From Macrostomum lignano (lineage: Eukaryota): a stretch of DNA of 64,000 nucleotides. Shown one piece after another: positions 17,584 to 58,276 of the stretch. How positions within the stretch are numbered: position 1 is the stretch's first letter; the number at the start of each line of letters is the position of its first letter. The DNA is taken from positions 1-64,000 of the forward strand of contig NIVC01002876.1 in the NCBI GenBank assembly GCA_002269645.1. The letters run 5' to 3'. The notes under the pieces are model-generated. The model had not been told where the DNA came from. It searched no databases and saw nothing but the letters and a program-made list of their open reading frames with translations. The translations under genes and the position numbers were made by a program.

Positions 17584-20500
17584 AACTGGCATTGGTTGAA
17601 AAAACTGGCACTGGCTCAAATAAACTGGCACAGGCTCAAATGAACTGGCACTGGCTCAAATAAACTGGCACAGGCTCAAATGAACTGGCACTGGCTCAAA
17701 TGAACTGGCACTGGCTCAAATGAACTGGCACAGGCTCAAATAAACTGGCACAGGCTCAAATAAACTGGCAGTGGCTCAAATAAACTGGCACAGGCTCAAA
17801 TGAACTGGCACTGGCTCAAATGAACTGGCACTGGCTCAAATGAACTGGCACAGGCTCAAATAAACTGGCACAGGCTCAAATAAACTGGCACTGGCTCAAA
17901 TGAACTGGCACTGGCTCAAATGAACTGGCACAGGCTCAAATAAACTGGCACAGGCTCAAATAAACTGGCACTGGCTCAAATAAACTGGCACAGGCTCAAA
18001 TGAACTGGCACTGGCTCAAATAAACTGGCACTGGCTCAAATGAACTGGCACAGGCTCAAATGAACTGGCACTGGCTCAAATGAACTGGCACTGGCTCAAA
18101 TGAACTGGCACAGGCTCAAATAAACTGGCACAGGCTCAAATGAACTGGCACAGGCTCAAATGAACTGGCACTGGCTCAAATGAACTGGCACAGGCTCAAA
18201 TAAACTGGCACAGGCTCAAATAAACTGGCACTGGCTCAAATAAACTGGCACTGGCTCAAATGAACTGGCACTGGCTGAAATAAACTGGCACAGGTTCAAA
18301 TAAACTGGCACTGGCTCAAATAAACTGGCACAGGCTCAAATGAACTGGCACTGGCTCAAATGAACTGGCACTGGCTCAAATAAACTGGCACAGGCTCAAA
18401 TGAACTGGCACTGGCTCAAATGAACTGGCACTGGCTCAAATGAACTGGCACAGGCTCAAATGAACTGGCACAGGCTCAAATAAACTTGCACTGGCTCAAA
18501 TAAACTGGCACAGGCTCAAATAAACTGGCACTGGCTGAAATAAACTGGCACAGGCTCAAATGAACTGGCACTGGCTGAAATAAACTGGCACAGGCTCAAA
18601 TAAACTGGCACTGGCTCAAATGAACTGGCACTGGCTCAAATGAACTGGCACTGGCTCAAATAAACTGGCACAGGCTCAAATAAACTTGCACTGGCTCAAA
18701 TAAACTGGCACAGGCTCAAATAAACTGGCACTGGCTGAAATAAACTGGCACAGGCTCAAATGAACTGGCACTGGCTGAAATAAACTGGCACAGGCTCAAA
18801 TAAACTGGCACTGGCTCAAATGAACTGGCACTGGCTCAAATGAACTGGCACTGGCTCAAATAAACTGGCACTGGCTCAAATGAACTGGCACTGGCTCAAA
18901 TGAACTGGCACTGGCTCAAATAAACTGGCACTGGCTCAAATGAACTGGCACAGGCTCAAATGAACTGGCACTGGCTCAAATGAACTGGCACAAGCTCAAA
19001 TGAACTGGCACTGGCTCAAATGAACTGGCACTGGCTCAAATAAACTGGCACTGGCTCAAATGAACTGGCACAGGCTCAAATAAACTGGCACAGGCTCAAA
19101 TAAACTGGCACTGGCTCAAATAAACTGGCACTGGCTCAAATGAACTGGCACTGGCTCAAATGAACTGGCACTGGCTCAAATAAACTGGCACTGGCTCAAA
19201 TGAACTGGCACTGCCTCAAATGAACTGGCACTGGCTCAAATAAACTGGCACTGGCTCAAATGAACTGGCACAGGCTCAAATAAACTGGCACAGGCTCAAA
19301 TGAACTGGCACTGGCTGAAATAAACTGGCACTGGCTCAAATAAACTGGCACAGGCTCAAATAAACTGGCACAGGCTCAAATAAACTGGCACAGGCTCAAA
19401 AAAACTGGCACAGGCTCAAATAAACTGGCACAGGCTCAAATAAACTGGCACAGGCTCAAATGAACTGGCACTGGCTGAAATAAACTGGCACAGGCTCAAA
19501 TGAACTGGCACAGGCTCAAATGAACTGGCACTGGCTCAAATGAACTGGCACTGGCTCAAATGAACTGGCACTGGCTCAAATGAACTGGCACAGGCTCAAA
19601 TGAACTGGCACTGGCTCAAATGAACTGGCACTGGCTCAAATAAACTGGCACTGGCTCAAATGAACTGGCACAGGCTCAAATAAACTGGCACAGGCTCAAA
19701 TAAACTTGCACTGGCTCAAATAAACTGGCACAGGCTCAAATAAACTGGCACTGGCTGAAATAAACTGGCACAGGCTCAAATGAACTGGCACTGGCTGAAA
19801 TAAACTGGCACAGGCTCAAATAAACTGGCACTGGCTCAAATGAACTGGCACTGGCTCAAATGAACTGGCACTGGCTCAAATAAACTGGCACTGGCTCAAA
19901 TGAACTGGCACTGGCTCAAATGAACTGGCACTGGCTCAAATAAACTGGCACTGGCTCAAATGAACTGGCACAGGCTCAAATGAACTGGCACTGGCTCAAA
20001 TGAACTGGCACAAGCTCAAATGAACTGGCACTGGCTCAAATGAACTGGCACTGGCTCAAATAAACTGGCACTGGCTCAAATGAACTGGCACAGGCTCAAA
20101 TAAACTGGCACAGGCTCAAATAAACTGGCACTGGCTCAAATGAACTGGCACTGGCTCAAATGAACTGGCACTGGCTTAAATAAACTGGCACTGGCTCAAA
20201 TGAACTGGCACAGGCTCAAATAAACTGGCACAGGCTCAAATAAACTGGCACAGGCTCAAATAAACTGGCACTGGCTCAAATGAACTGGCACTGGCTCAAA
20301 TAAACTGGCACAGGCTCAAATAAACTGGCACAGGCTCAAATAAACTGGCACAGGCTCAAAAAAACTGGCACAGGCTCAAATAAACTGGCACTGGCTGAAA
20401 TAAACTGGCACAGGCTCAAATGAACTGGCACTGGCTGAAATAAACTGGCACAGGCTCAAATAAACTGGCACTGGCTCAAATGAACTGGCACAGGCTCAAA

Positions 20501-23500
20501 TGAACTGGCACTGGCTCAAATGAACTGGCACAAGCTCAAATGAACTGGCACTGGCTCAAATGAACTGGCACTGGCTCAAATAAACTGGCACTGGCTCAAA
20601 TGAACTGGCACAGGCTCAAATAAACTGGCACAGGCTCAAATAAACTGGCACTGGCTCAAATAAACTGGCACAGGCTCAAATGAACTGGCACTGGCTCAAA
20701 TGAACTGGCACTGGCTCAAATAAACTGGCACTGGCTCAAATGAACTGGCACTGCCTCAAATGAACTGGCACTGGCTCAAATAAACTGGCACTGGCTCAAA
20801 TAAACTGGCACTGGCTCAAATGAACTGGCACTGGCTCAAATGAACTGGCACTGGCTCAAATAAACTGGCACTGGCTCAAATGAACTGGCACTGCCTCAAA
20901 TGAACTGGCACTGGCTCAAATAAACTGGCACTGGCTCAAATGAACTGGCACAGGCTCAAATAAACTGGCACAGGCTCAAATGAACTGGCACTGGCTGAAA
21001 TAAACTGGCACTGGCTCAAATAAACTGGCACAGGCTCAAATAAACTGGCACAGGCTCAAATAAACTGGCACAGGCTCAAAAAAACTGGCACAGGCTCAAA
21101 TAAACTGGCACAGGCTCAAAAAAACTGGCACAGGCTCAAATGAACTGGCACTGGCTCAAATAAACTGGCACAGGCTCAAATGAACTGGCACTGGCTCAAA
21201 TGAACTGGCACTGGCTCAAATGAACTGGCACTGGCTCAAATGAACTGGCACTGGCTCAAATGAACTGGCACTGGCTCAAATGAACTGGCACTGGCTCAAA
21301 TGAACTGGCACTGGCTCAAATAAACTGGCACTGGCTCAAATGAACTGGCACAGGCTCAAATAAACTGGCACAGGCTCAAATAAACTTGCACTGGCTCAAA
21401 TAAACTGGCACAGGCTCAAATGAACTGGCACTGGCTCAAATGAACTGGCACTGGCTCAAATAAACTGGCACAGGCTCAAATGAACTGGCACTGGCTCAAA
21501 TGAACTGGCACTGGCTCAAATGAACTGGCACTGGCTCAAATAAACTGGCACAGGCTCAAATGAACTGGCACTGGCTCAAATAAACTGGCACTGGCTGAAA
21601 AAAACTGGCACAGGCTCAAATGAACTGGCACTGGCTCAAATGAACTGGCACAGGCTCAAATGAACTGGCACTGGCTCAAATGAACTGGCACTGGCTCAAA
21701 TGAACTGGCACAGGCTCAAATAAACTGGCACAGGCTCAAATAAACTGGCACTGGCTCAAATAAACTGGCACAGGCTCAAATGAACTGGCACTGGCTCAAA
21801 TGAACTGGCACTGGCTCAAATAAACTGGCACAGGCTCAAATGAACTGGCACTGGCTCAAATGAACTGGCACTGGCTCAAATGAACTGGCACAGGCTCAAA
21901 TAAACTGGCACTGGCTCAAATGAACTGGCACTGGCTCAAATAAACTGGCACAGGCTCAAATAAACTGGCACTGGCTGAAATAAACTGGCACAGGCTCAAA
22001 AAAACTGGCACAGGCTCAAATGAACTGGCACAGGCTCAAATGAACTGGCACTGGCTCAAATGAACTGGCACTGGCTCAAATAAACTGGCACAGGCTCAAA
22101 TAAACTGGCACTGGCTGAAATAAACTGGCACTGGCTCAAATGAACTGGCACTGGCTCAAATGAACTGGCACTGGCTTAAATGAACTGGCACAGGCTCAAA
22201 TGAACTGGCACTGGCTCAAATGAACTGGCACTGGCTCAAATGAACTGGCACAGGCTCAAATAAACTGGCACTGGCTCAAATGAACTGGCACTGGCTCAAA
22301 TAAACTGGCACAGGCTCAAATAAACTGGCACTGGCTGAAATAAACTGGCACTGGCTCAAATGAACTGGCACTGGCTGAAATAAACTGGCACAGGCTCAAA
22401 TGAACTGGCACTGGCTGAAATAAACTGGCACAGGCTCAAAAAAACTGGCACAGGCTCAAATGAACTGGCACTGGCTCAAATAAACTGGCACAGGCTCAAA
22501 TGAACTGGCACAGGCTCAAATGAACTGGCACTGGCTCAAATAAACTGGCACTGGCTCAAATGAACTGGCACAGGCTCAAATAAACTGGCACTGGCTGAAA
22601 AAAACTGGCACAGGCTCAAATGAACTGGCACTGGCTCAAATGAACTGGCACAGGCTCAAATGAACTGGCACTGGCTCAAATGAACTGGCACTGGCTCAAA
22701 TGAACTGGCACAGGCTCAAATAAACTGGCACAGGCTCAAATAAACTGGCACTGGCTCAAATAAACTGGCACAGGCTCAAATGAACTGGCACTGGCTCAAA
22801 TGAACTGGCACTGGCTCAAATAAACTGGCACAGGCTCAAATGAACTGGCACTGGCTCAAATGAACTGGCACTGGCTCAAATGAACTGGCACAGGCTCAAA
22901 TAAACTGGCACTGGCTCAAATGAACTGGCACTGGCTCAAATAAACTGGCACAGGCTCAAATAAACTGGCACTGGCTGAAATAAACTGGCACAGGCTCAAA
23001 TGAACTGGCACTGGCTGAAATAAACTGGCACAGGCTCAAATAAACTGGCACAGGCTCAAATGAACTGGCACTGGCTCAAATGAACTGGCACTGGCTCAAA
23101 TGAACTGGCACAGGCTCAAATGAACTGGCACAGGCTCAAATGAACTGGCACTGGCTCAAATAAACTGGCACAGGCTCAAATAAACTGGCACTGGCTGAAA
23201 TAAACTGGCACAGGCTCAAATGAACTGGCACTGGCTGAAATAAACTGGCACAGGCTCAAATAAACTGGCACTGGCTCAAATGAACTGGCACTGGCTCAAA
23301 TGAACTGGCACTGGCTCAAATAAACTGGCACTGGCTCAAATGAACTGGCACTGGCTCAAATGAACTGGCACTGGCTCAAATAAACTGGCACTGGCTCAAA
23401 TGAACTGGCACAGGCTCAAATGAACTGGCACTGGCTCAAATGAACTGGCACAGGCTCAAATGAACTGGCACTGGCTCAAATGAACTGGCACTGGCTCAAA

Positions 23501-24200
23501 TAAACTGGCACTGGCTCAAATGAACTGGCACAGGCTCAAATAAACTGGCACAGGCTCAAATAAACTTGCACTGGCTCAAATAAACTGGCACAGGCTCAAA
23601 TGAACTGGCACTGGCTCAAATGAACTGGCACTGGCTCAAATAAACTGGCACAGGCTCAAATGAACTGGCACTGGCTCAAATGAACTGGCACTGGCTCAAA
23701 TGAACTGGCACAGGCTCAAATAAACTGGCACAGGCTCAAATGAACTGGCACTGGCTCAAATAAACTGGCACAGGCTCAAATAAACTGGCACTGGCTCAAA
23801 TAAACTGGCACAGGCTCAAATGAACTGGCACTGGCTGAAATAAACTGGCACAGGCTCAAATAAACTGGCACAGGCTCAAATGAACTGGCACTGGCTCAAA
23901 TGAACTGGCACTGGCTCAAATAAACTGGCACTGGCTCAAATGAACTGGCACTGGCTCAAATGAACTGGCACTGGCTCAAATAAACTGGCACTGGCTCAAA
24001 TGAACTGGCACAGGCTCAAATAAACTGGCACAGGCTCAAATGAACTGGCACTGGCTGAAATAAACTGGCACAGGCTCAAATGAACTGGCACTGGCTCAAA
24101 TGAACTGGCACTGGCTCAAATAAACTGGCACAGGCTCAAAAAAACTGGCACAGGCTCAAATGAACTGGCACAGGCTCAAATGAACTGGCACTGGCTTAAA
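17584..24200 (+). repeat. 6.6-kb satellite of a 20-bp unit t[ag]aactggcac[at]ggctcaaa, ~330 units
   Basis: Perfect 20-bp register throughout; two common dimorphic positions plus rare variants. Confidence 0.99.
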
Positions 24201-29320: not shown

Positions 29321-32300
29321 TCAGGTGCTGGTGAACAGTGACACGAGTTTTTTGGGCCTCAGCCTGGCTGTCAGCATCGACATTCGACGACGTACAGGCG
29401 CTGCGGTTGCGGTACCGACAGTGTCGTTGGCTGCCGCGGTCGTTTTTTCTGCCACTCCGACTGAGGCGGATGCGGTGGCGGAAGCGGCGGCTGTAGCGGC
29501 AGTGTCCGCTTCGTGAGCCCGCCTTGTGAGGTCTTCGATCTCCACGAGCATGGCGTCCTGCTCCATGTGCAGGTCATCCCGTTCGATTAGGCAGCGGACG
29601 AGCTCGCTGTTGTGCTCTGCGGGGAAAGCGGTGTGGGGTGGCAGATGGGTTCAGTGTGGGGTGGCCGATGGTCTCAGTGTGGGATGACCGATGGGCTCAG
29701 TGTGGCATGACAGATGGGCTCAGTGTGGGGTGGCCGATGGTCTCAGTGTGGGATGGCCGATGGGTTCAATGTGGGGTGGCCGATGGTCTCAGTGTGGGAT
29801 GGCAGATGGGCTCAGTGTGGGATGGCAGATGGGCGCAGTGTGGGATGGCCGATGGGCTCAGTGTGGGATGGCCGATGGGCTCAGTGTGGGATGACCGATG
29901 GGCTCAGTGTGGCATGACAGATGGGCTCAGTGTGGGATGGTCGATGGGCTCAGTGTGGGATGGTCGATGAGCTCCATGTGGGATGGTCGATGAGCTCCAT
30001 GTGGGATGGCAGATGGGCTCAGTGTGGGGTGGCCGATGGGCTCAGTGTGGGGTGGCCGATGGGCTCAGTGTGGGATGGTCGATGAGCTCCGTGTGGGATG
30101 GCAGATGGGCTCAGTGTGGGGTGGCCGATGGGCTCATTGTGGGGTGGCCGATGGGCTCAGTGTGGGGTGGCCGATGGGCTCAGTGTGGGGTGGCCGATGG
30201 GCTCATTGTGGGATGGCCGATGGGCTCAGTGTGGGGTGGCCGATGGGCTCAGTGTGGGGTGGTCGATGGGCTCAGTGTGGGGTGGCCGATGGGCTCAGTG
30301 TGGGGTGGCCGATGGGCTCAGTGTGGGGTGGCCGATGGGCTCATTGTGGGATGGCCGATGGGCTCAGTGTGGGGTGGCCGATGGGCTCAGTGTGGGGTGG
30401 CCGATGGGCTCATTGTGGAATGGCCGATGGGCTCAGTGTGGGGTGGCCGATGGGCTCAGTGTGGGGTGGCCGATGGGCTCATTGTGGGATGGCCGATGGG
30501 CTCAGTGTGGGGTGGCCGATGGGCTCAGTGTGGGGTGGCCGATGGGCTCAGTGTGGGATGGTCGATGAGCTCCGTGTGGGATGGCAGATGGGCTCAGTGT
30601 GGGGTGGCCGATGGGCTCAGTGTGGGGTGGCCGATGGGCTCATTGTGGGGTGGCCGATGGGCTCAGTGTGGGGTGGCCGATGGGCTCAGTGTGGGGTGGC
30701 CGATGGGCTCATTGTGGGATGGCCGATGGGCTCAGTGTGGGGTGGCCGATGGGCTCAGTGTGGGGTGGCCGATGGGCTCATTGTGGAATGGCCGATGGGC
30801 TCAGTGTGGGGTGGCCGATGGGCTCAGTGTGGGGTGGCCGATGGGCTCATTGTGGGATGGCCGATGGGCTCAGTGTGGGGTGGCCGATGGGCTCAGTGTG
30901 GGGTGGCCGATGGGCTCAGTGTGGGATGGTCGATGAGCTCCGTGTGGGATGGCAGATGGGCTCAGTGTGGGGTGGCCGATGGGCTCAGTGTGGGGTGGCC
31001 GATGGGCTCATTGTGGGGTGGCCGATGGGCTCAGTGTGGGGTGGCCGATGGGCTCAGTGTGGGGTGGCCGATGGGCTCATTGTGGGATGGCCGATGGGCT
31101 CAGTGTGGGGTGGCCGATGGGCTCAGTGTGGGGTGGCCGATGGGCTCATTGTGGAATGGCCGATGGGCTCAGTGTGGGGTGGCCGATGGGCTCAGTGTGG
31201 GGTGGCCGATGGGCTCATTGTGGGATGGCCGATGGGCTCAGTGTGGGGTGGCCGATGGGCCAGAACTCGGCGCTCTCACCCTCAATCCTGGCCAGAAGGC
31301 TATTGTGTGCCAGCTGCAGCGCGCCGAGGCTCATCATTTCTAGGCTGGAGGCGCCCAAGCGGCGCGACGGCGCCACGCCGAGCATCTCGGCGAGGGCGTC
31401 CCGGCAGCGCCGGTCCCTGGCGTGCCGCTCCACCTCAAGCTGCATTCGGGCCATGGGCTCAGCCTGGGCCAGTGCCACCTGCGCTTCCGCCTGCAGCTCC
31501 GCCTGTCGGCGTCGAAGGCAACCGGCATCCGACGCAACGTCCCGACAGCCGGCGTCGCCACCGTCGGCCTGTTCGACGGGCGGCGGCGACGGCGGCGGCG
31601 GTGGCTCCAGGCCGAGGCTGGCGAGGAGCTCCGGCTCCAGAGGACGGCGGCTCGGTCGTAAGGGAGGTGGCGGCGGCGGCGGCGGCTGCAGCGGCAGAGG
31701 TGGGGGGGGGGCAACGATGACCTGCAGTCGGTGAGGCAGTCAGTCTTGCGCAGAGCTTGTTGTTGTTAAATGAGGGTGGGAAGCAAGGGGCCCCCAGATC
31801 AGCCCAAGTAGGGCTCTGCCGCTGGATCTGTCTGTGGGCCATACTGCCAGGGGCATATAGCCCGAGAGGCCACGCTTGGGACCAGGACTCAACGCCTGGA
31901 CATACCTGATTGGGGCTACTAGCTCAAACCTTTGGACTAAGACACCGCCAACCCAAAGTGGAATCAGGGACGGTGCTAGGACCGAGTCCACCCAAGCCAC
32001 CCCCAACGACAAGACCCGGGAGTGCGCGCAAAAAGATTGGAGTTTAGAAAGCGGTCCGAGAAAGCAGAGCTTATTACTGTCAACTAGATGTATAGGTTAT
32101 AAACTACTCTTAATTGAGTAGCTGATGCGCATATTGTTGGGAAAAAAACTCCAATAAAGAATTGATTAATTTTTCAACCTCCAACTCGCTTTCTATGAAC
32201 CAGGAGAATTCTTGAGCATGCTCAGCGCACGATGGACGCTCAGTCACCGGCACTAATGTATAATTGTGCCTTTTCAAATTTCATCTTAGATTACTATTCT

Positions 32301-45810: not shown

Positions 45811-49755
<3,945 letters not shown>

Positions 49756-50159
49756 GGTAACCACTAGCAGTTTTAGCTTAGGCTGGACGGAGACGGACAG
49801 TCGGCAGTAGCGAGCAGAGCGGAACGCTAGGCGAGAGGAGATTGAAGCGAGCTGCGGGGAGGGCGGAAGATTGGGGGTGGGGCGTTGTTAGGGAATTTCA
49901 CCTAGCTCATAAATCATAGCGAAATCATAAATCATCGACTATTCTGTTCTATCTAGCCGTGTTGAAATGCTTTAGCACTAGACTGATTGATCAACTACAT
50001 GCATAGGCAGGCGGCGAAGCAGACGCTGCTGTCTATGTACAAAATTGAGCGCAGCACTGGTTGACCAGCTTACTAAATAAGGATTTATTTTGTGGGAAGC
50101 TACGTTGTGGGAAAATATGTTAGTCAATGCTGATTATTGGTTTACCACGATTGACTGCG

Positions 50160-50360
50160 GAACTTAACCCTTACTATAGACCAAGACCTAAGCTAAACTC
50201 TAATCTAAACTCAAAACTGAACTAAACCTAAAAAACTAACTTAAAATGTAACCCTAACCTAAAACTAACCTTAACCTAACCCTGACCTAAACCGAATCCT
50301 ACCCTAAACCTAACCCTAACCTAAAACCTGATCTTAACCTAAACTCTATCCTAAACCATA
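50160..50360 (+). repeat. Degenerate telomere-like (aaccct/aaccta)n tract
   Basis: cctaaccctaacc-type hexamers between SPRTN and THOP1. Confidence 0.7.
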
Positions 50361-51060: not shown

Positions 51061-52503
51061 TCAGCTACTCAGGCACAAATCCAAGTGAACATTGATGTCG
51101 GACTCTGGCATTTGCCTGCTGCAAACTGGACAGCTGACCAGCTGCTGGCTGACTGCTCCTATGCTGGCGGCGCCACCGACGCCATTAAGAGTGCCACTGA
51201 CGCCATTAGGAGCGCCACCGACGCCCTTAGGACCGCCATCGACGCCATTAGGAGCGCCACCGAGGCCATTAGAAGCGCCACCGATGCCCTTAAGAGCGCC
51301 ATCGACGCCATTAGGAGCGCCACCGATGCCATTAGGAGCGCCACCGACGCCCTTAAGAGCGCCACCGACGCGACTAAGAGCGCCACCGACGCCATTACCA
51401 GGGCCACCGACGTTGTTATAGCTAGAGCTGCCACCGCTGCCGCCAAGTCGAATGCCGACACCAGGAAACGCGGCATCGGCGGTGCCGACGGCAGCAGACA
51501 CGGCGGCGCTAACAGAGTCGGCAGAAGCGACGCAAACGGCGCCATCTGATTCAGCAATAGCAGGTCGCCAAGATTTCGACTCCACAGAACCTACAGAAGG
51601 ATCTGGGCCGCTGCTAGCAGGCGAGGCGGGAATGAACTGCCGTATGTCCGTCTGTCCAGCAGCCGGCCGCTTCGCTGGCCGCTCCCGTTGCTCATCTTTG
51701 CCGCCGTCGGCAGCCCGACTATTCTTCTTAGCCAACGGCTTCTTCTTATCGGCGAATCCTTCGGGCTCCTTGACTTTGACGAATCGGCCGCCGCAGTCGG
51801 CCTGATGACTGCGCCACCAGGTGTCGTTAGGCCCGGGCGCCCGGTTCATGGACCGGCGCACCCAGCCGTGGAATGGCGGCCGGTTCCGGCAGGGCCCCTC
51901 GCAGCGCCACCAGTGCTGCTTGTAGACGGCGACCTCGTCGTGAAAGCTGTGATAGACGGTGATGTTGGTGCCGGCAGCCGAGTTGATGCGGCGCATGTGC
52001 GCCAGAAACTGCGGCCCGTGCCCGTCACGGTCGCGATTATTGGCGGTGACAAACAGGTGCGCGTGAATCATCTCGTGCAGCAGGGTTTCGACTAAGTCGC
52101 GTCTGGGCCGCAGTTTGAGCAGCGGCTCGCTCAGTTTAATGCAGCAGAGGCCGCCGCGGCCCTCGTAGCAGCACAGGCCGGCGCACAGGGTCATGCGGGG
52201 GCTCCACTTCACCTCAACTGCGACCAGGCTGCCGCCGAAGTAGCGCCCGTTGAAGTCCAGAAACAGGGCGTGCACATTGGGCGTGGGGTCCACCAGCTCC
52301 CAGTTGGGGTCCACTAGCGAGCCGCCCAACTCGTTGCTATTGGCAACGGCTGCCTTGCCTCTCTGCTTCGAGTCATCCTCCTCCTGCTCCTGGGAGGCCA
52401 GGCGCAGGCACAGCTCTCGGTCGGCCGCCTCCGACTGCTGCTCCTCCTGGCGGTCAAGCAGCTCGGCTTCCAGCTGCCACTGAAGCGCCTCTTCTGGGCT
52501 CCA
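51061..52503 (-). CDS. SPRTN: SprT-like (Spartan/DVC1) DNA-dependent metalloprotease; exon lacks its own ATG
   Basis: 1443-nt open exon after acceptor ctcttcag. SLVDPNWELVDPTP, VKWSPRMTLCAGLC, LHEMIHA (HExxH), PIP-like QTDIRQF, SHP-like FPGVGIRLGG, UBZ CPVC..INVHLDLC. Confidence 0.93.
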   Translation of the reverse strand, partial: WSPEEALQWQLEAELLDRQEEQQSEAADRELCLRLASQEQEEDDSKQRGKAAVANSNELGGSLVDPNWELVDPTPNVHALFLDFNGRYFGGSLVAVEVKWSPRMTLCAGLCCYEGRGGLCCIKLSEPLLKLRPRRDLVETLLHEMIHAHLFVTANNRDRDGHGPQFLAHMRRINSAAGTNITVYHSFHDEVAVYKQHWWRCEGPCRNRPPFHGWVRRSMNRAPGPNDTWWRSHQADCGGRFVKVKEPEGFADKKKPLAKKNSRAADGGKDEQRERPAKRPAAGQTDIRQFIPASPASSGPDPSVGSVESKSWRPAIAESDGAVCVASADSVSAAVSAAVGTADAAFPGVGIRLGGSGGSSSYNNVGGPGNGVGGALSRVGGALKGVGGAPNGIGGAPNGVDGALKGIGGASNGLGGAPNGVDGGPKGVGGAPNGVSGTLNGVGGAASIGAVSQQLVSCPVCSRQMPESDINVHLDLCLSS

Positions 52504-52539
52504 CTGAAGAGATTGGAGAGAGATCTGGTTATGCGAAAC

Positions 52540-52795
52540 TGATAGTATGTAACTATGCTAGTATGTACCTATGATAGTATGTAACTATGCTAGTATGTAC
52601 CTATGATAGTATGTAACTATGCTAGTATGTACCTATGATAGTATGTAACTATGCTAGTATGTACCTATGATAGTATGTAACTATGCTAGTATGTACCTAT
52701 GCTAGTATGTAACTATGATAGTATGTACCTATGCTAGTATGTAACTATGATAGTATGTAACTATGCTAGTATGTAACTATGCTAGTATGTAAGTA
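52540..52795 (+). repeat. 16-bp minisatellite (tagtatgtaactatg[ac])
   Basis: Immediately upstream of the SPRTN acceptor. Confidence 0.95.
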
Positions 52796-52874
52796 TGCAA
52801 TACCGCAATAGACTAATAATAATTGATTACGCTTGCCCTAAAGGCCAGATGTGCAACCGACAGCTCAGTCGCAG

Positions 52875-53112
52875 CTATCGCGCGGCGCATCTGAAGGCTG
52901 CGTACGGCTGTTCAGTCCAAGGACTGGGGGGTCGCCACACACACCCTCAATTACCCCAGCCAATGCTGGCACCCATTTTACAGCTGTGTGAACAGAAGCA
53001 ATGCAGAGTTAAGTGTCTTGCTCAAGGATACAAACTGTTCCAGTGGGATCAGGAATCGAACCCCCACCTTCAAGTCGTGAGTCCGACGCTCTGACCACTA
53101 GGCTACAACCCC
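52875..53112 (-). mobile_element. tRNA-derived SINE family B (CORE-like domain)
   Basis: Head ggggttgtagcctagtggtcagagcg..ggttcgattcc (A and B boxes), then ccttgagcaagacacttaac..cagctgtaaaatggg resembling the CORE domain; second copy at 62060-62250. Confidence 0.85.
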
Positions 53113-53509
53113 TAGTTGCATGACTGCGATAGACTGCAATAGACTGCAATGCTGCAATATATCATTGCATCCAATACACCCTCATTAACTACCTCGATCA
53201 GCCTTTATTAACTTGTAACTTACGAATAAAAAATAAATATTGATAACAATAACAATCGAGCTGCATACAGCATCTTGCGCTGAAATGCGGAAGACAAATG
53301 GCTATTTATATAATTTTTTAAACAGAACTAGCAGACACACTAAACTGGCGTACGCAAAAAATGCACAGATACAAATTGAAGCCAAAGAAGCTTAGATAAG
53401 ATACAAAACTATCGAAAAAGATTCCGGCTGATCCTCCCAGATGGAGCCGCAGTCTAGCTCGATTGCTATCGTAAAATGAGTATGCTTTTTAAACTTCACG
53501 ATATCTTCT

Positions 53510-53900
53510 CAACATTGGGGTGGGGGCTGGCGAGGGAAGGAAATGCAGCTGCGTACATTGGGGTGGGGTCGGTGAGGGAAGGAAATGCGGCTGCGTACAT
53601 TGGGGTGGGGGCTGGTGAGGGAAGGAAATGCGGCTGCGTACATTGGGGTGGGGGCTGGTGAGGGAAGGAAATGCGGCTGCGTACATTGGGGTGGGGGCTG
53701 GTGAGGGAAGGAATGCGGCTGCGTACATTAGGGTGGGGGCTGGTGAGGGAAGGAATGCAGCTGCGTACATTAGGGTGGGGGCTGGTGAGGGAAGGAAATG
53801 CGGCTGCATACATTAGGGTGGGGGCTGGTGAGGGAAGGAAATGCGGCTGCGTACATTAGGGTGGGGGCTGGTGAGAGAAGGAAATGCGGCTGCATATATT
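53510..53900 (+). repeat. 43-bp G-rich minisatellite (gggaaggaaatgcggctgcgtacattggggtgggggctggtga)
   Basis: Downstream of the YARS2 stop. Confidence 0.95.
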
Positions 53901-54035
53901 GGGATGTTGGCTGTAACAAAATGAGTGTTATGAGCTGAAGTTATAGGATTTACATACTATCTAAAACTAAAAATAGATCAGCCAGTCATTAGCAATTTTC
54001 CGGAATTCGCTTGATTATTAAAAGCTGTCCCGTAG

Positions 54036-57564: not shown

Positions 57565-58276
57565 AACAGACAGATAGACACTGCGGAACTCACACGGCCT
57601 CGCCCGGACGCGCCCCATCACAGCAGAAATATTTCCCATGATTATCCGCAATGCCGGCCAGCTGCCGTCCAATGCTGGCCGAATTTTCTTCGACATCGCG
57701 CTCGGCCAGCCGGACCCGGTCGGACATTCGGCCGGACGGATCGCCGATTCGGGCGGTGGCGCCGCCGACAACAAAGATGGCGCCGTGGCCAAGCGAGCGC
57801 AGCCGCAGCAGGCCAACAATGGCCAGCAAATTGCCCAGGTGCAAACTGTTGGCCGTCGGGTCGAAGCCGCAATAGAAATAGCGACCGCCGGACGCCGAAT
57901 TCAGGTATTCGTTAAAGTACTTCTCACTGCGGAGGGTGGGTGAGGTCAATTGAGGTCACATGAGGTCATTTAAAGTTAATTGAGATTAAATGAGATCATT
58001 TGAGGTCAGGTGAGGTCAGTTGAGGTTAAGTAAGGTCATTTGAGGTCAGCTCGAATGAGCTCGTCTCCCTACACCCTTCCTGGTTCCGCCAATACACAAT
58101 CCTGTACATGTCCACATTGAAGATAAAAATCGCAAGGCGACAAACCTTTTCAAAGGCAGCACAGCCTGAAAGCAGCCGCGATCAAGCAGTGCCCGGACCG
58201 ATTCGGCCGCGCTGCCACCGCCAGCGGACAGACAGCGGCGGCACAGGCGGCCAGGTAAATTTATTATTGGGCGCAT
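54036..58276 (-). CDS. YARS2: Mitochondrial tyrosyl-tRNA synthetase (~495 aa)
   Basis: Exons 58276-58146, 57926-57594, 56014-55798, 55712-55512, 54964-54799, 54475-54036; phases 2,2,0,0,1, total 1488 nt. [15 protein letters not shown] (HIGH), LQAYDW-like [23 protein letters not shown] (KMSKS); Arg-rich targeting-like N-terminus. Confidence 0.95.
54515..54715 (+). repeat. ~44-bp GT-rich repeat in YARS2 intron 5
   Basis: gggtgggtgggttggagtgcacattgaggtgggtgtatatggtg units. Confidence 0.85.
56165..56625 (+). repeat. 20-21-bp minisatellite (ttcaatctttatccaagtag), degenerate edges, YARS2 intron 2
   Basis: Direct reading. Confidence 0.9.
57318..57580 (+). repeat. (CAGA)n microsatellite next to the YARS2 exon 2 donor
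   Basis: Direct reading. Confidence 0.96.
57940..58050 (+). repeat. 10-bp repeat (tgaggtca..) in YARS2 intron 1
   Basis: Direct reading. Confidence 0.8.

What the first reader, a model, noticed from the sequence alone, without database searches (positions are those of the whole stretch)
52330..52520. SPRTN may take its initiator AUG from the spliced leader
The exon opens in phase 0 directly after the acceptor (TGG AGC CCA..; WSPEEALQWQL..DRELCLRLASQE..SLVDPNWELVDP). The first in-frame ATG is well inside the protease domain (WSPRM). The two upstream donors I tested (53223, ~52801) give no in-frame ATG exon. Flatworm spliced leaders end in AUG, which would be exactly in frame here. A DNA-protein-crosslink repair enzyme would then depend on trans-splicing for translation.
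Basis: partly seen in the sequence, partly recalled or inferred. Interest (0 to 1): 0.75.

Follow-up and report, generated by a model that had tools for sequence, protein, structure and literature searches.

The report
Spliced-leader start codon for flatworm SPRTN
In the flatworm Macrostomum lignano the DNA-repair protease gene SPRTN has no start codon of its own and most likely borrows the AUG at the end of the trans-spliced leader RNA, which is a nice clean example of a mechanism already known in flatworms since 2006.

Summary
The window is Macrostomum lignano (contig NIVC01002876.1). SPRTN lies on the minus strand as one exon, 52503..51061, opening in phase 0 directly after a consensus acceptor (tctCTTCAG|TGG, 88% pyrimidine tract).

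- An in-frame TAG lies 19 codons upstream.
- The first genomic in-frame ATG is codon 104, inside the SprT domain.
- No credible cis ATG exon exists in the 1.5-kb upstream spacer.
- The published M. lignano spliced leader (SL) is 35 nt and ends in ATG, so SL joining gives MWSPEE….

Comparative support is good. Trematode orthologues begin MWSDTE, MWSLEE and MWSDEE with a genomic ATG. A fasciolid transcript contig carries the trematode SL on SPRTN, with the SL AUG in frame 10 codons upstream of MWSDEE.

The public models agree that a start is missing. This locus is annotated 5'-partial. The paralogue's ATG exon is an out-of-frame piece of a mariner transposon that this locus lacks.

No M. lignano junction read could be reached, and a second in-frame acceptor at 52479 cannot be excluded. 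SL-AUG initiation is established in flatworms (Cheng et al. 2006), so this is a new member of a known kind.

The parts
51061..52503 (-). Single coding exon of M. lignano SPRTN: 480 codons plus TGA, with no initiator ATG of its own. Predicted mature product is 481 aa, beginning M(SL)-WSPEE.
   Evidence: Translation. Pfam SprT-like 1.6e-30 and SPRTN_ZBD 6e-25. 100% identical to the 5'-partial NCBI model P0001.
52504..52525 (-). Proposed SL trans-splice acceptor: pyrimidine tract plus CTTCAG (AG at 52505-52504). The same acceptor is used by the cis-spliced model of the paralogue.
   Evidence: 88% pyrimidines and a match to [T/C]TNCAG (motif from PMC8629364). The paralogue junction ..CKP|WSPEE falls at this acceptor.
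52479..52487 (-). Alternative in-frame acceptor gcgCTTCAG|TGG (exon start 52479). SL joining here would give MWQLEAELL.
   Evidence: Motif match but only 41% pyrimidine tract. The NCBI 5'-partial CDS starts 3 nt downstream, at 52476.
52558..52560 (-). In-frame TAG that closes the frame 19 codons upstream of the acceptor. No ATG lies between it and the exon.
52192..52194 (-). First genomic in-frame ATG (codon 104, WSPRM), inside the SprT-like domain. It is the fourth AUG of the predicted mRNA.
52275..52376 (-). Two out-of-frame ATGs (52376 and 52277, opening ORFs of 20 and 22 codons). A scanning ribosome would meet them before the internal in-frame ATG.
52504..54035 (-). Outron / intergenic spacer (1532 nt) between the stop of the upstream same-strand tRNA-synt_1b gene and the SPRTN acceptor. 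About 686 nt of it is tandem repeat (52543-52798, 53122-53159, 53512-53903), and it holds a tRNA-like element at 53044-53112.
53266..53267 (-). TA dinucleotide that is empty here. In the paralogous locus it carries a ~1.3-kb Mos1/mariner-like element, which provides that model's ATG exon.

Best explanation
The SPRTN pre-mRNA of Macrostomum lignano is SL trans-spliced at the CTTCAG| acceptor at 52505-52504. The upstream 1.5-kb repeat-rich outron is discarded, possibly as part of a polycistronic transcript shared with the upstream tRNA-synthetase gene. The 35-nt spliced leader, which ends ...TTGCAUG, is joined directly to UGG AGC CCA. The SL's terminal AUG then becomes the first AUG of the mRNA, in frame, and serves as the initiator codon of a 481-aa protein, MWSPEEALQ....

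Shown:
- the exon structure, the phase and the absence of any genomic start;
- the quality of the acceptor;
- the SL sequence (from the literature);
- homology of the N-terminus to trematode MWS.EE starts;
- SL-SPRTN joining with an in-frame SL AUG in a trematode transcript.

Inferred:
- that M. lignano SPRTN is actually trans-spliced at this site;
- that ribosomes start at the SL AUG.

Evolutionary reading (inference): an ancestral flatworm SPRTN had a genomic ATG-TGG-TC/AG start close to an SL acceptor, as trematodes still do. In the Macrostomum lineage the acceptor now abuts the W codon and the SL AUG has replaced the genomic one.
For: 1. No genomic start. There is a TAG 19 codons upstream, no ATG until codon 104, and that ATG lies inside the Pfam SprT domain, residues 78-185.
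2. The acceptor at 52503 is the best in the region and matches the published trans-splice motif (PMC8629364).
3. The M. lignano SL ends in ATG. All reported flatworm SLs do (PMC12582326). A Macrostomum genome paper flags the SL ATG as a likely translation start (PMC10468722).
4. In the modelled mRNA the SL AUG is the first AUG and is in frame. The next two AUGs are out of frame.
5. Trematode orthologues begin MWSDTE (O. felineus, with genomic ATG TGG TCT), MWSLEE (D. dendriticum), MWSDEE (F. hepatica and a fasciolid) and MWSSSK (P0281). W-to-SLVDP spacing is 58-60 aa, against 60 aa here. The composition-based chance of W,S,x,E,E at a fixed position is about 6e-6.
6. Fasciolid transcript contig L004 starts with the last 24 nt of the published platyhelminth SL, followed by 27 nt and then ATG TGG TCT. 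Its SL AUG is in frame.
7. No phase-0 ATG exon with a consensus donor exists in the spacer.
8. The NCBI model of this locus is 5'-partial and lacks a Met. The annotation pipeline trimmed SL sequence before ORF calling (PMC5730564).
9. Precedent: in S. mansoni the SL AUG is in frame in 28% of trans-spliced mRNAs, and more than 40 cDNAs need it (Cheng et al. 2006, as summarised in PMC9851317).
Against: - No M. lignano SL-junction read or transcript could be retrieved. Exact look-ups of MWSPEE... and MWQLEA... full-length proteins found nothing. An N-terminal protein search found nothing. No other Macrostomum relative appeared.
- The public CDS for this locus starts 27 nt downstream of the proposed acceptor and 3 nt after the second acceptor. 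This could mean the SL joins at 52479. However, the two paralogous Peptidase_M3 models start 3 and 15 nt after one and the same AG, so annotated 5' ends are ragged.
- The paralogue has an annotated cis-spliced ATG exon at the same acceptor.
- The SL AUG context is weak: T at -3 and T at +4.
- WS.EE is a short motif, and it also occurs internally in two fish SPRTNs.
Confidence: 0.75

Rival explanations
1. The SL is joined at the second acceptor (gcgCTTCAG|TGG, exon start 52479) rather than at 52503. The SL AUG is still in frame, giving MWQLEAELL..., and WSPEEALQ would be outron. This changes the N-terminus, not the mechanism.
For: The site matches [T/C]TNCAG and is in phase 0. The NCBI 5'-partial CDS of this locus begins 3 nt after it.
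Against: Its pyrimidine tract is poor (41% against 88%). The paralogue's RNA-based model uses the 52503 acceptor. WSPEE aligns with the trematode N-termini MWS.EE. Annotated 5' ends are ragged: 3 and 15 nt at the same AG in the two M3 paralogues.
Confidence: 0.2
2. SPRTN has its own promoter and a cis-spliced 5' exon that carries the ATG and joins at 52503. That exon is unrecognised here, lying further upstream or having a non-consensus donor.
For: The paralogous model PAA67284.1 (P0121) has a 28-aa ATG exon spliced to exactly this acceptor. Flatworm acceptors are often shared between cis- and trans-splicing (PMC12582326).
Against: That exon is an out-of-frame reading of the 3' end of a 1.3-kb Mos1/mariner-like transposase. 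The element is inserted at a TA only in the paralogue and its donor is weak (GTATCA). It is absent from the window. The scan of the 1.5-kb spacer finds no phase-0 ATG exon with a GT[AG]AG donor. The locus is annotated 5'-partial despite RNA-seq-guided annotation. Trematode N-termini put the Met directly before W.
Confidence: 0.08
3. Translation does not use the SL AUG. It starts at a near-cognate codon (in-frame CTG at codons 11, 15, 31, 33 or 35) or at the internal ATG (codon 104). Alternatively, this copy is a non-functional duplicate.
For: In-frame CTGs exist. M. lignano is a recent polyploid with many redundant copies (PMC8629364).
Against: Codon 104 lies inside the SprT domain and is preceded by two out-of-frame AUGs. 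Both copies keep a 480-codon ORF that differs at a single nucleotide. An in-frame cap-proximal AUG would be supplied by the SL anyway.
Confidence: 0.05

Closest known systems
Schistosoma mansoni mRNAs that use the SL 3'-terminal AUG as initiator methionine (Cheng, Cohen, Ndegwa and Davis, J Biol Chem 2006; summarised in PMC9851317 and PMC12582326)
   Same: The flatworm SL ends in AUG, the acceptor is in phase 0, and the recipient exon lacks an AUG of its own, so the ORF depends on the SL AUG.
   Different: Different species (a free-living macrostomorph) and a different gene. Here nothing is shown experimentally.
slORFs, open reading frames created by SL addition (slORFfinder, PMC9851317)
   Same: The same concept: the start codon is contributed by the leader.
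   Different: Many slORFs are new or alternative ORFs. Here the SL AUG would initiate the canonical, conserved protein at what looks like its ancestral N-terminus.
Fasciolid trematode SPRTN transcript (Logan contig SRR5929441_22523, L004; protein P0107)
   Same: The same gene. It is SL trans-spliced a few codons from the start, its SL AUG is in frame, and it has the same N-terminal MWS.EE.
   Different: The trematode keeps a genomic ATG 10 codons downstream of the SL AUG, so it does not depend on the SL. M. lignano has CAG (the acceptor) where the ATG would be.
SPRTN / Spartan / DVC-1 of other Metazoa
   Same: The SprT-like HEXXH protease domain, the Spartan zinc-binding domain, a C-terminal UBZ-like CPVC..H..C motif and an N-terminal LxLRLxxQE motif are all present.
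   Different: Elsewhere the start codon is encoded in the genome. M. lignano also carries an in-frame 21-nt tandem repeat (G-V-G-G-A-P-N heptads) ahead of the UBZ.

Membership tests
SL-AUG-initiated flatworm mRNA (Cheng et al. 2006 type) | The organism's spliced leader ends in AUG. | tested here: met
   The organism was identified as M. lignano. Its SL, CGGTCTCTTACTGCGAAGACTCAATTTATTGCATG, is given in PMC8629364. No SL RNA gene lies in the window itself.
SL-AUG-initiated flatworm mRNA (Cheng et al. 2006 type) | The acceptor is in phase 0, so the SL AUG is in frame with the ORF. | tested here: met
   Exon starts 52503 and 52479 are both phase 0.
SL-AUG-initiated flatworm mRNA (Cheng et al. 2006 type) | No genomic in-frame AUG is available upstream of the essential coding sequence. 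| tested here: met
   An upstream TAG closes the frame, the first ATG is at codon 104 inside the SprT domain, and the spacer holds no credible cis ATG exon.
SL-AUG-initiated flatworm mRNA (Cheng et al. 2006 type) | The mRNA is actually SL trans-spliced at that acceptor. | not testable with these tools
   No M. lignano reads or transcripts were reachable. Indirect support: the motif and pyrimidine tract, the 5'-partial public model, and SL-SPRTN joining in a trematode transcript.
SL-AUG-initiated flatworm mRNA (Cheng et al. 2006 type) | Translation initiates at the SL AUG. | not testable with these tools
   This needs Ribo-seq, N-terminal proteomics or a reporter. Comparative support comes from MWS.EE N-termini in trematodes.
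SPRTN / Spartan DNA-dependent metalloprotease | SprT-like protease domain with an HEXXH motif. | tested here: met
   PF10263, E = 1.6e-30, residues 78-185. HEMIH is present.
SPRTN / Spartan DNA-dependent metalloprotease | Spartan zinc-binding domain directly after the protease domain. | tested here: met
   PF22934, E = 6e-25, residues 196-243.
SPRTN / Spartan DNA-dependent metalloprotease | C-terminal ubiquitin-binding zinc finger (UBZ). | tested here: inconclusive
   zf-WRNIP1_ubi scores 19 bits, below the 26.4 cut-off. The motif CPVCSRQMPESDINVHLDLC is conserved with orthologues.
Downstream gene of an M. lignano operon (Ustyantsev and Berezikov 2021 criterion) | Same-strand neighbours, both trans-spliced, with a repeat-adjusted intergenic distance below 1 kb. 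| tested here: inconclusive
   The three genes are on the same strand. The stop-to-acceptor spacer is 1532 nt, or about 846 nt after subtracting tandem repeats. Trans-splicing status is unverified, and the threshold comes from PMC8629364.

The most novel reading that the evidence does not exclude
The SL AUG has taken over exactly the codon position of an ancestral genome-encoded initiator. Trematodes retain ATG-TGG-TCx while also carrying an in-frame SL AUG a few codons upstream. A conserved genome-maintenance protease in M. lignano has therefore become strictly dependent on trans-splicing for its translation. The same acceptor can be captured by a transposon-borne donor to produce a different N-terminus in the paralogue. 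This would be a traceable case of start-codon outsourcing to the spliced leader.
Probability: 0.5. Interest if true: 0.4.

Novelty: new member of a known kind. Interest (0 to 1): 0.3.

Why it matters
The practical value is in annotation. Both public M. lignano SPRTN models are probably wrong at the N-terminus: one is 5'-partial, and the other starts in a mariner-derived exon. The same problem is likely to affect other M. lignano genes whose SL was trimmed, ATG included, before ORF calling. The neighbouring Peptidase_M3 gene shows the same signature.

Biologically, it adds a clean, conserved-gene example of an ORF that depends on the SL AUG, in a basal free-living flatworm that can be made transgenic. 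The ancestral state (genomic ATG plus in-frame SL AUG) is still visible in trematodes. It does not reveal a new mechanism.

Tried and rejected
- I searched for direct transcript evidence. An N-terminal 74-aa protein search found nothing. Exact look-ups of eight candidate full-length products found nothing; these were MWSPEE.., MWQLEA.., the versions without Met, the version with SL read-through, and the M104 start. An HMMER search of 1.84 billion representatives with the N-terminal 110 aa found no other Macrostomum relative.
- I looked for an SL RNA gene in the window and found none.
- I looked for the gene identifier Mlig002522 and for the run SRR5929441 in the literature. Neither gave a hit.
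- I considered using the annotated 5' ends to locate the SL site and rejected the idea. The two M3 paralogues start 3 and 15 nt after the same AG, and the tRNA-synthetase CDS starts 3 nt after a genomic ATG, so annotated starts are ragged.
- I considered paralogue divergence as a test of coding constraint on the N-terminal extension. It is uninformative: there is 1 nucleotide difference in 1443 nt of CDS, and the flanks are nearly identical.
- I considered the paralogue's ATG exon as a refutation and rejected it, because it lies in a mariner insertion absent from this locus.
- WS.EE also occurs in two fish SPRTNs. There it is internal and lies after the LALQLQ motif, so I judged it unrelated.
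- Cheng et al. 2006 itself is not held in the library. It is cited through papers that summarise it.

Full report
**What is there**

The finding lies on the minus strand. After the AG at 52505-52504, the sequence TGG AGC CCA GAA GAG opens a frame. That frame runs 480 codons without interruption to a TGA at 51063-51061.

The product is a complete SPRTN/Spartan protein:
- Pfam SprT-like, E = 1.6e-30, residues 78-185, with HEMIH;
- Spartan zinc-binding domain, E = 6e-25, residues 196-243;
- a C-terminal UBZ-like motif, CPVC..H..C.

Its best database matches are metazoan SPRTN proteins.

Upstream of the AG, the same frame holds 18 sense codons without ATG and then a TAG at 52560-52558. Downstream, the first in-frame ATG is codon 104 (52194-52192), inside the protease domain.

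**Organism and public models**

The exon is 100% identical to an NCBI protein from Macrostomum lignano assembly GCA_002269645.1, contig NIVC01002876.1. Window coordinates equal contig coordinates.

That model (P0001, 471 aa) is 5'-partial. It begins QLEAELL at 52476 and has no Met.

A near-identical paralogous locus (L001; PAA67284.1, Mlig002522.g3, 508 aa) has a 28-aa first exon, MSSKTSSRSSGMRIGGIASTAGFTGCKP. That exon is not a conserved start:
- It is an out-of-frame reading of the 3' end of a ~1.3-kb Mos1/mariner-like element (Pfam HTH_48 and Transposase_1).
- The element is inserted at a TA that is empty in the window (53267-53266).
- Its donor is weak (GTATCA).

What the paralogue's model does suggest is that the 52503-type acceptor is used in vivo. 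Its annotation was assembled from mapped RNA-seq (PMC5730564), and the non-consensus donor is unlikely to be an ab initio prediction.

**The spliced leader**

M. lignano has a single 35-nt SL, CGGTCTCTTACTGCGAAGACTCAATTTATTGCATG. It is trans-spliced to about 30% of genes. The top motif enriched at SL acceptors is [T/C]TNCAG (PMC8629364).

All reported flatworm SLs end in AUG (PMC12582326). A Macrostomum genome paper notes explicitly that the terminal ATG is a likely translation start (PMC10468722).

The acceptor at 52503 reads gatctctctccaatctCTTCAG|TGG. It matches the motif and has an 88% pyrimidine tract, the best of all 40 AGs in 52300-52620. A second CTTCAG|TGG sits 24 nt downstream (exon start 52479). 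It is also in phase 0, but its tract is only 41% pyrimidine.

I joined the SL to 52503 in silico. The SL AUG is then the first AUG of the mRNA and is in frame (MWSPEE...). The next two AUGs (52376 and 52277) are out of frame, with ORFs of 20 and 22 codons. The internal in-frame ATG is only the fourth AUG.

**Is there a cis alternative?**

The spacer between the stop of the upstream same-strand tRNA-synt_1b gene (54036) and the acceptor is 1532 nt. It consists largely of a 16-mer array, a 43-mer array and a tRNA-like element.

I scanned every GT in the spacer for a stop-free, phase-0 exon containing an ATG. No candidate has a GT[AG]AG donor. The few candidates lie inside the repeats and have weak donors.

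**Comparative evidence**

Trematode SPRTN proteins begin M-W-S-x-E-E:

| Species or protein | N-terminus |
|---|---|
| Opisthorchis felineus | MWSDTEVEKI |
| Dicrocoelium dendriticum | MWSLEEITKI |
| Fasciola hepatica | ..VAMWSDEEICRI |
| A further fasciolid | MWSDEE |
| A further trematode-like genomic model (P0281) | MWSSSK |

The distance from W to the conserved SLVDP motif is 58-60 residues in trematodes and 60 in M. lignano.

In O. felineus the ATG is genomic (ATG TGG TCT). The M. lignano exon opens WSPEE immediately after the AG, so the SL AUG would restore exactly MWSPEE. From the composition of the held SPRTN set, the chance of W,S,x,E,E at a fixed position is about 6e-6. Two fish SPRTNs have an internal WS.EE, but in a different position relative to the LALQLQ motif.

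The strongest single datum is a Logan transcript contig from a fasciolid (L004, run SRR5929441). Its protein is 84% identical to F. hepatica SPRTN. The contig begins CTCTGCCCTGTATATTAGTGCATG, which is the last 24 nt of the published platyhelminth SL AACCTTAACGGTTCTCTGCCCTGTATATTAGTGCATG (PMC3795323). Then come 27 nt, and then ATG TGG TCT GAT GAA GAA.

So in a trematode, SPRTN mRNA is SL trans-spliced a few codons from its start, and the SL AUG is in frame (M-FTKDLISLA-MWSDEE). M. lignano looks like the end state of the same arrangement: the acceptor abuts the W codon and no genomic ATG remains.

**What is missing**

I could not reach any M. lignano transcript or read. Trans-splicing at this site and initiation at the SL AUG therefore remain inferences for this species.

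The public CDS start at 52476 could be read as support for the 52479 acceptor. That reading is weak, for two reasons:
- The two paralogous models of the downstream Peptidase_M3 gene start 3 and 15 nt after one and the same AG.
- The tRNA-synthetase CDS starts 3 nt after a genomic ATG.

Annotated 5' ends in this assembly are therefore ragged. Whichever acceptor is used, the SL AUG is in frame.

**Comparison with what is known, and novelty**

Use of the flatworm SL 3'-terminal AUG as initiator methionine was demonstrated in Schistosoma mansoni in 2006. There the SL AUG is in frame in 28% of trans-spliced mRNAs, and more than 40 cDNAs need it (as summarised in PMC9851317; also PMC12582326 and PMC5832876).

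The present case meets the sequence-level criteria of that class. It fails none that could be tested. The two experimental criteria could not be tested.

It is a new member of a known kind. It is useful for correcting annotation, and it is a tidy evolutionary example. It is not a new mechanism.

My scores are: confidence 0.75 that the SL supplies the initiator AUG, about 0.2 (a subset of the 0.75, not additional to it) that the junction is at 52479 rather than 52503, and interest 0.3.

Noticed in passing
window 49750-49860 (minus strand): The downstream same-strand Peptidase_M3 gene is also annotated 5'-partial. Its CDS starts at 49848, 3 nt after a strong acceptor (cccctccccgcag|CTC, exon start 49851). 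An SL AUG there would be in frame. It would add MLASISSRLAFRSARYCRLSVSVQPKLKLLVVT ahead of the first genomic Met (MATTTTKK..). That extension is Arg/Ser/Leu-rich with no acidic residues, so it looks like a mitochondrial presequence. This raises the possibility of dual targeting through the SL AUG versus the genomic AUG.
   Followed up: partly
L001 8878-10185 (paralogous locus); empty site at window 53266-53267: A 1.3-kb Mos1/mariner-like element (HTH_48 and Transposase_1, with the ORF interrupted) is inserted at a TA in the paralogue's outron. An out-of-frame piece of its 3' end is annotated as the ATG-containing first exon of SPRTN (PAA67284.1). This is either transposon exonisation or an annotation artefact.
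   Followed up: yes
L004 1-60 (Logan contig SRR5929441_22523): A fasciolid trematode SPRTN transcript carries the trematode spliced leader at its 5' end. The SL AUG is in frame, 10 codons upstream of the genomic ATG-TGG-TCT start.
   Followed up: yes
window 51170-51412 (minus strand, inside the SPRTN CDS): An in-frame 21-nt tandem repeat (11.6 copies, 84% matches) encodes G-V-G-G-A-P-N-like heptads between the PIP-like motif region and the UBZ. I did not see it in the other SPRTN sequences I read in full or at the N-terminus.
   Followed up: no
window 52543-52798 and 53512-53903: Two tandem arrays fill much of the outron: a 16-mer with 16 copies that ends 40 nt upstream of the acceptor, and a 43-mer with 9.2 copies. 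This fits the published remark that repeats inflate the intergenic distances of M. lignano operons.
   Followed up: partly
window 53044-53112 (minus strand): A tRNA-like element scores 31.1 bits against Rfam tRNA, just above the gathering score, but ARAGORN does not call it. It is probably the head of a tRNA-derived SINE or a tRNA pseudogene inside the outron. It is present in both paralogous loci.
   Followed up: partly
window 50253-50357: Degenerate telomere-like repeats (CCTAA/CCCTAA units) lie in the spacer between SPRTN and Peptidase_M3.
   Followed up: no
window 58273-58276 (minus strand): The upstream tRNA-synt_1b gene is annotated with a CDS that starts at 58273, immediately after a genomic ATG at 58276-58274. 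The public model is therefore probably missing its own first codon.
   Followed up: partly
window 18001-24000 and 30001-32000: These blocks show composition anomalies: AT skew of about 0.31 over 6 kb, and 66.8% GC over 2 kb. I did not examine them.
   Followed up: no
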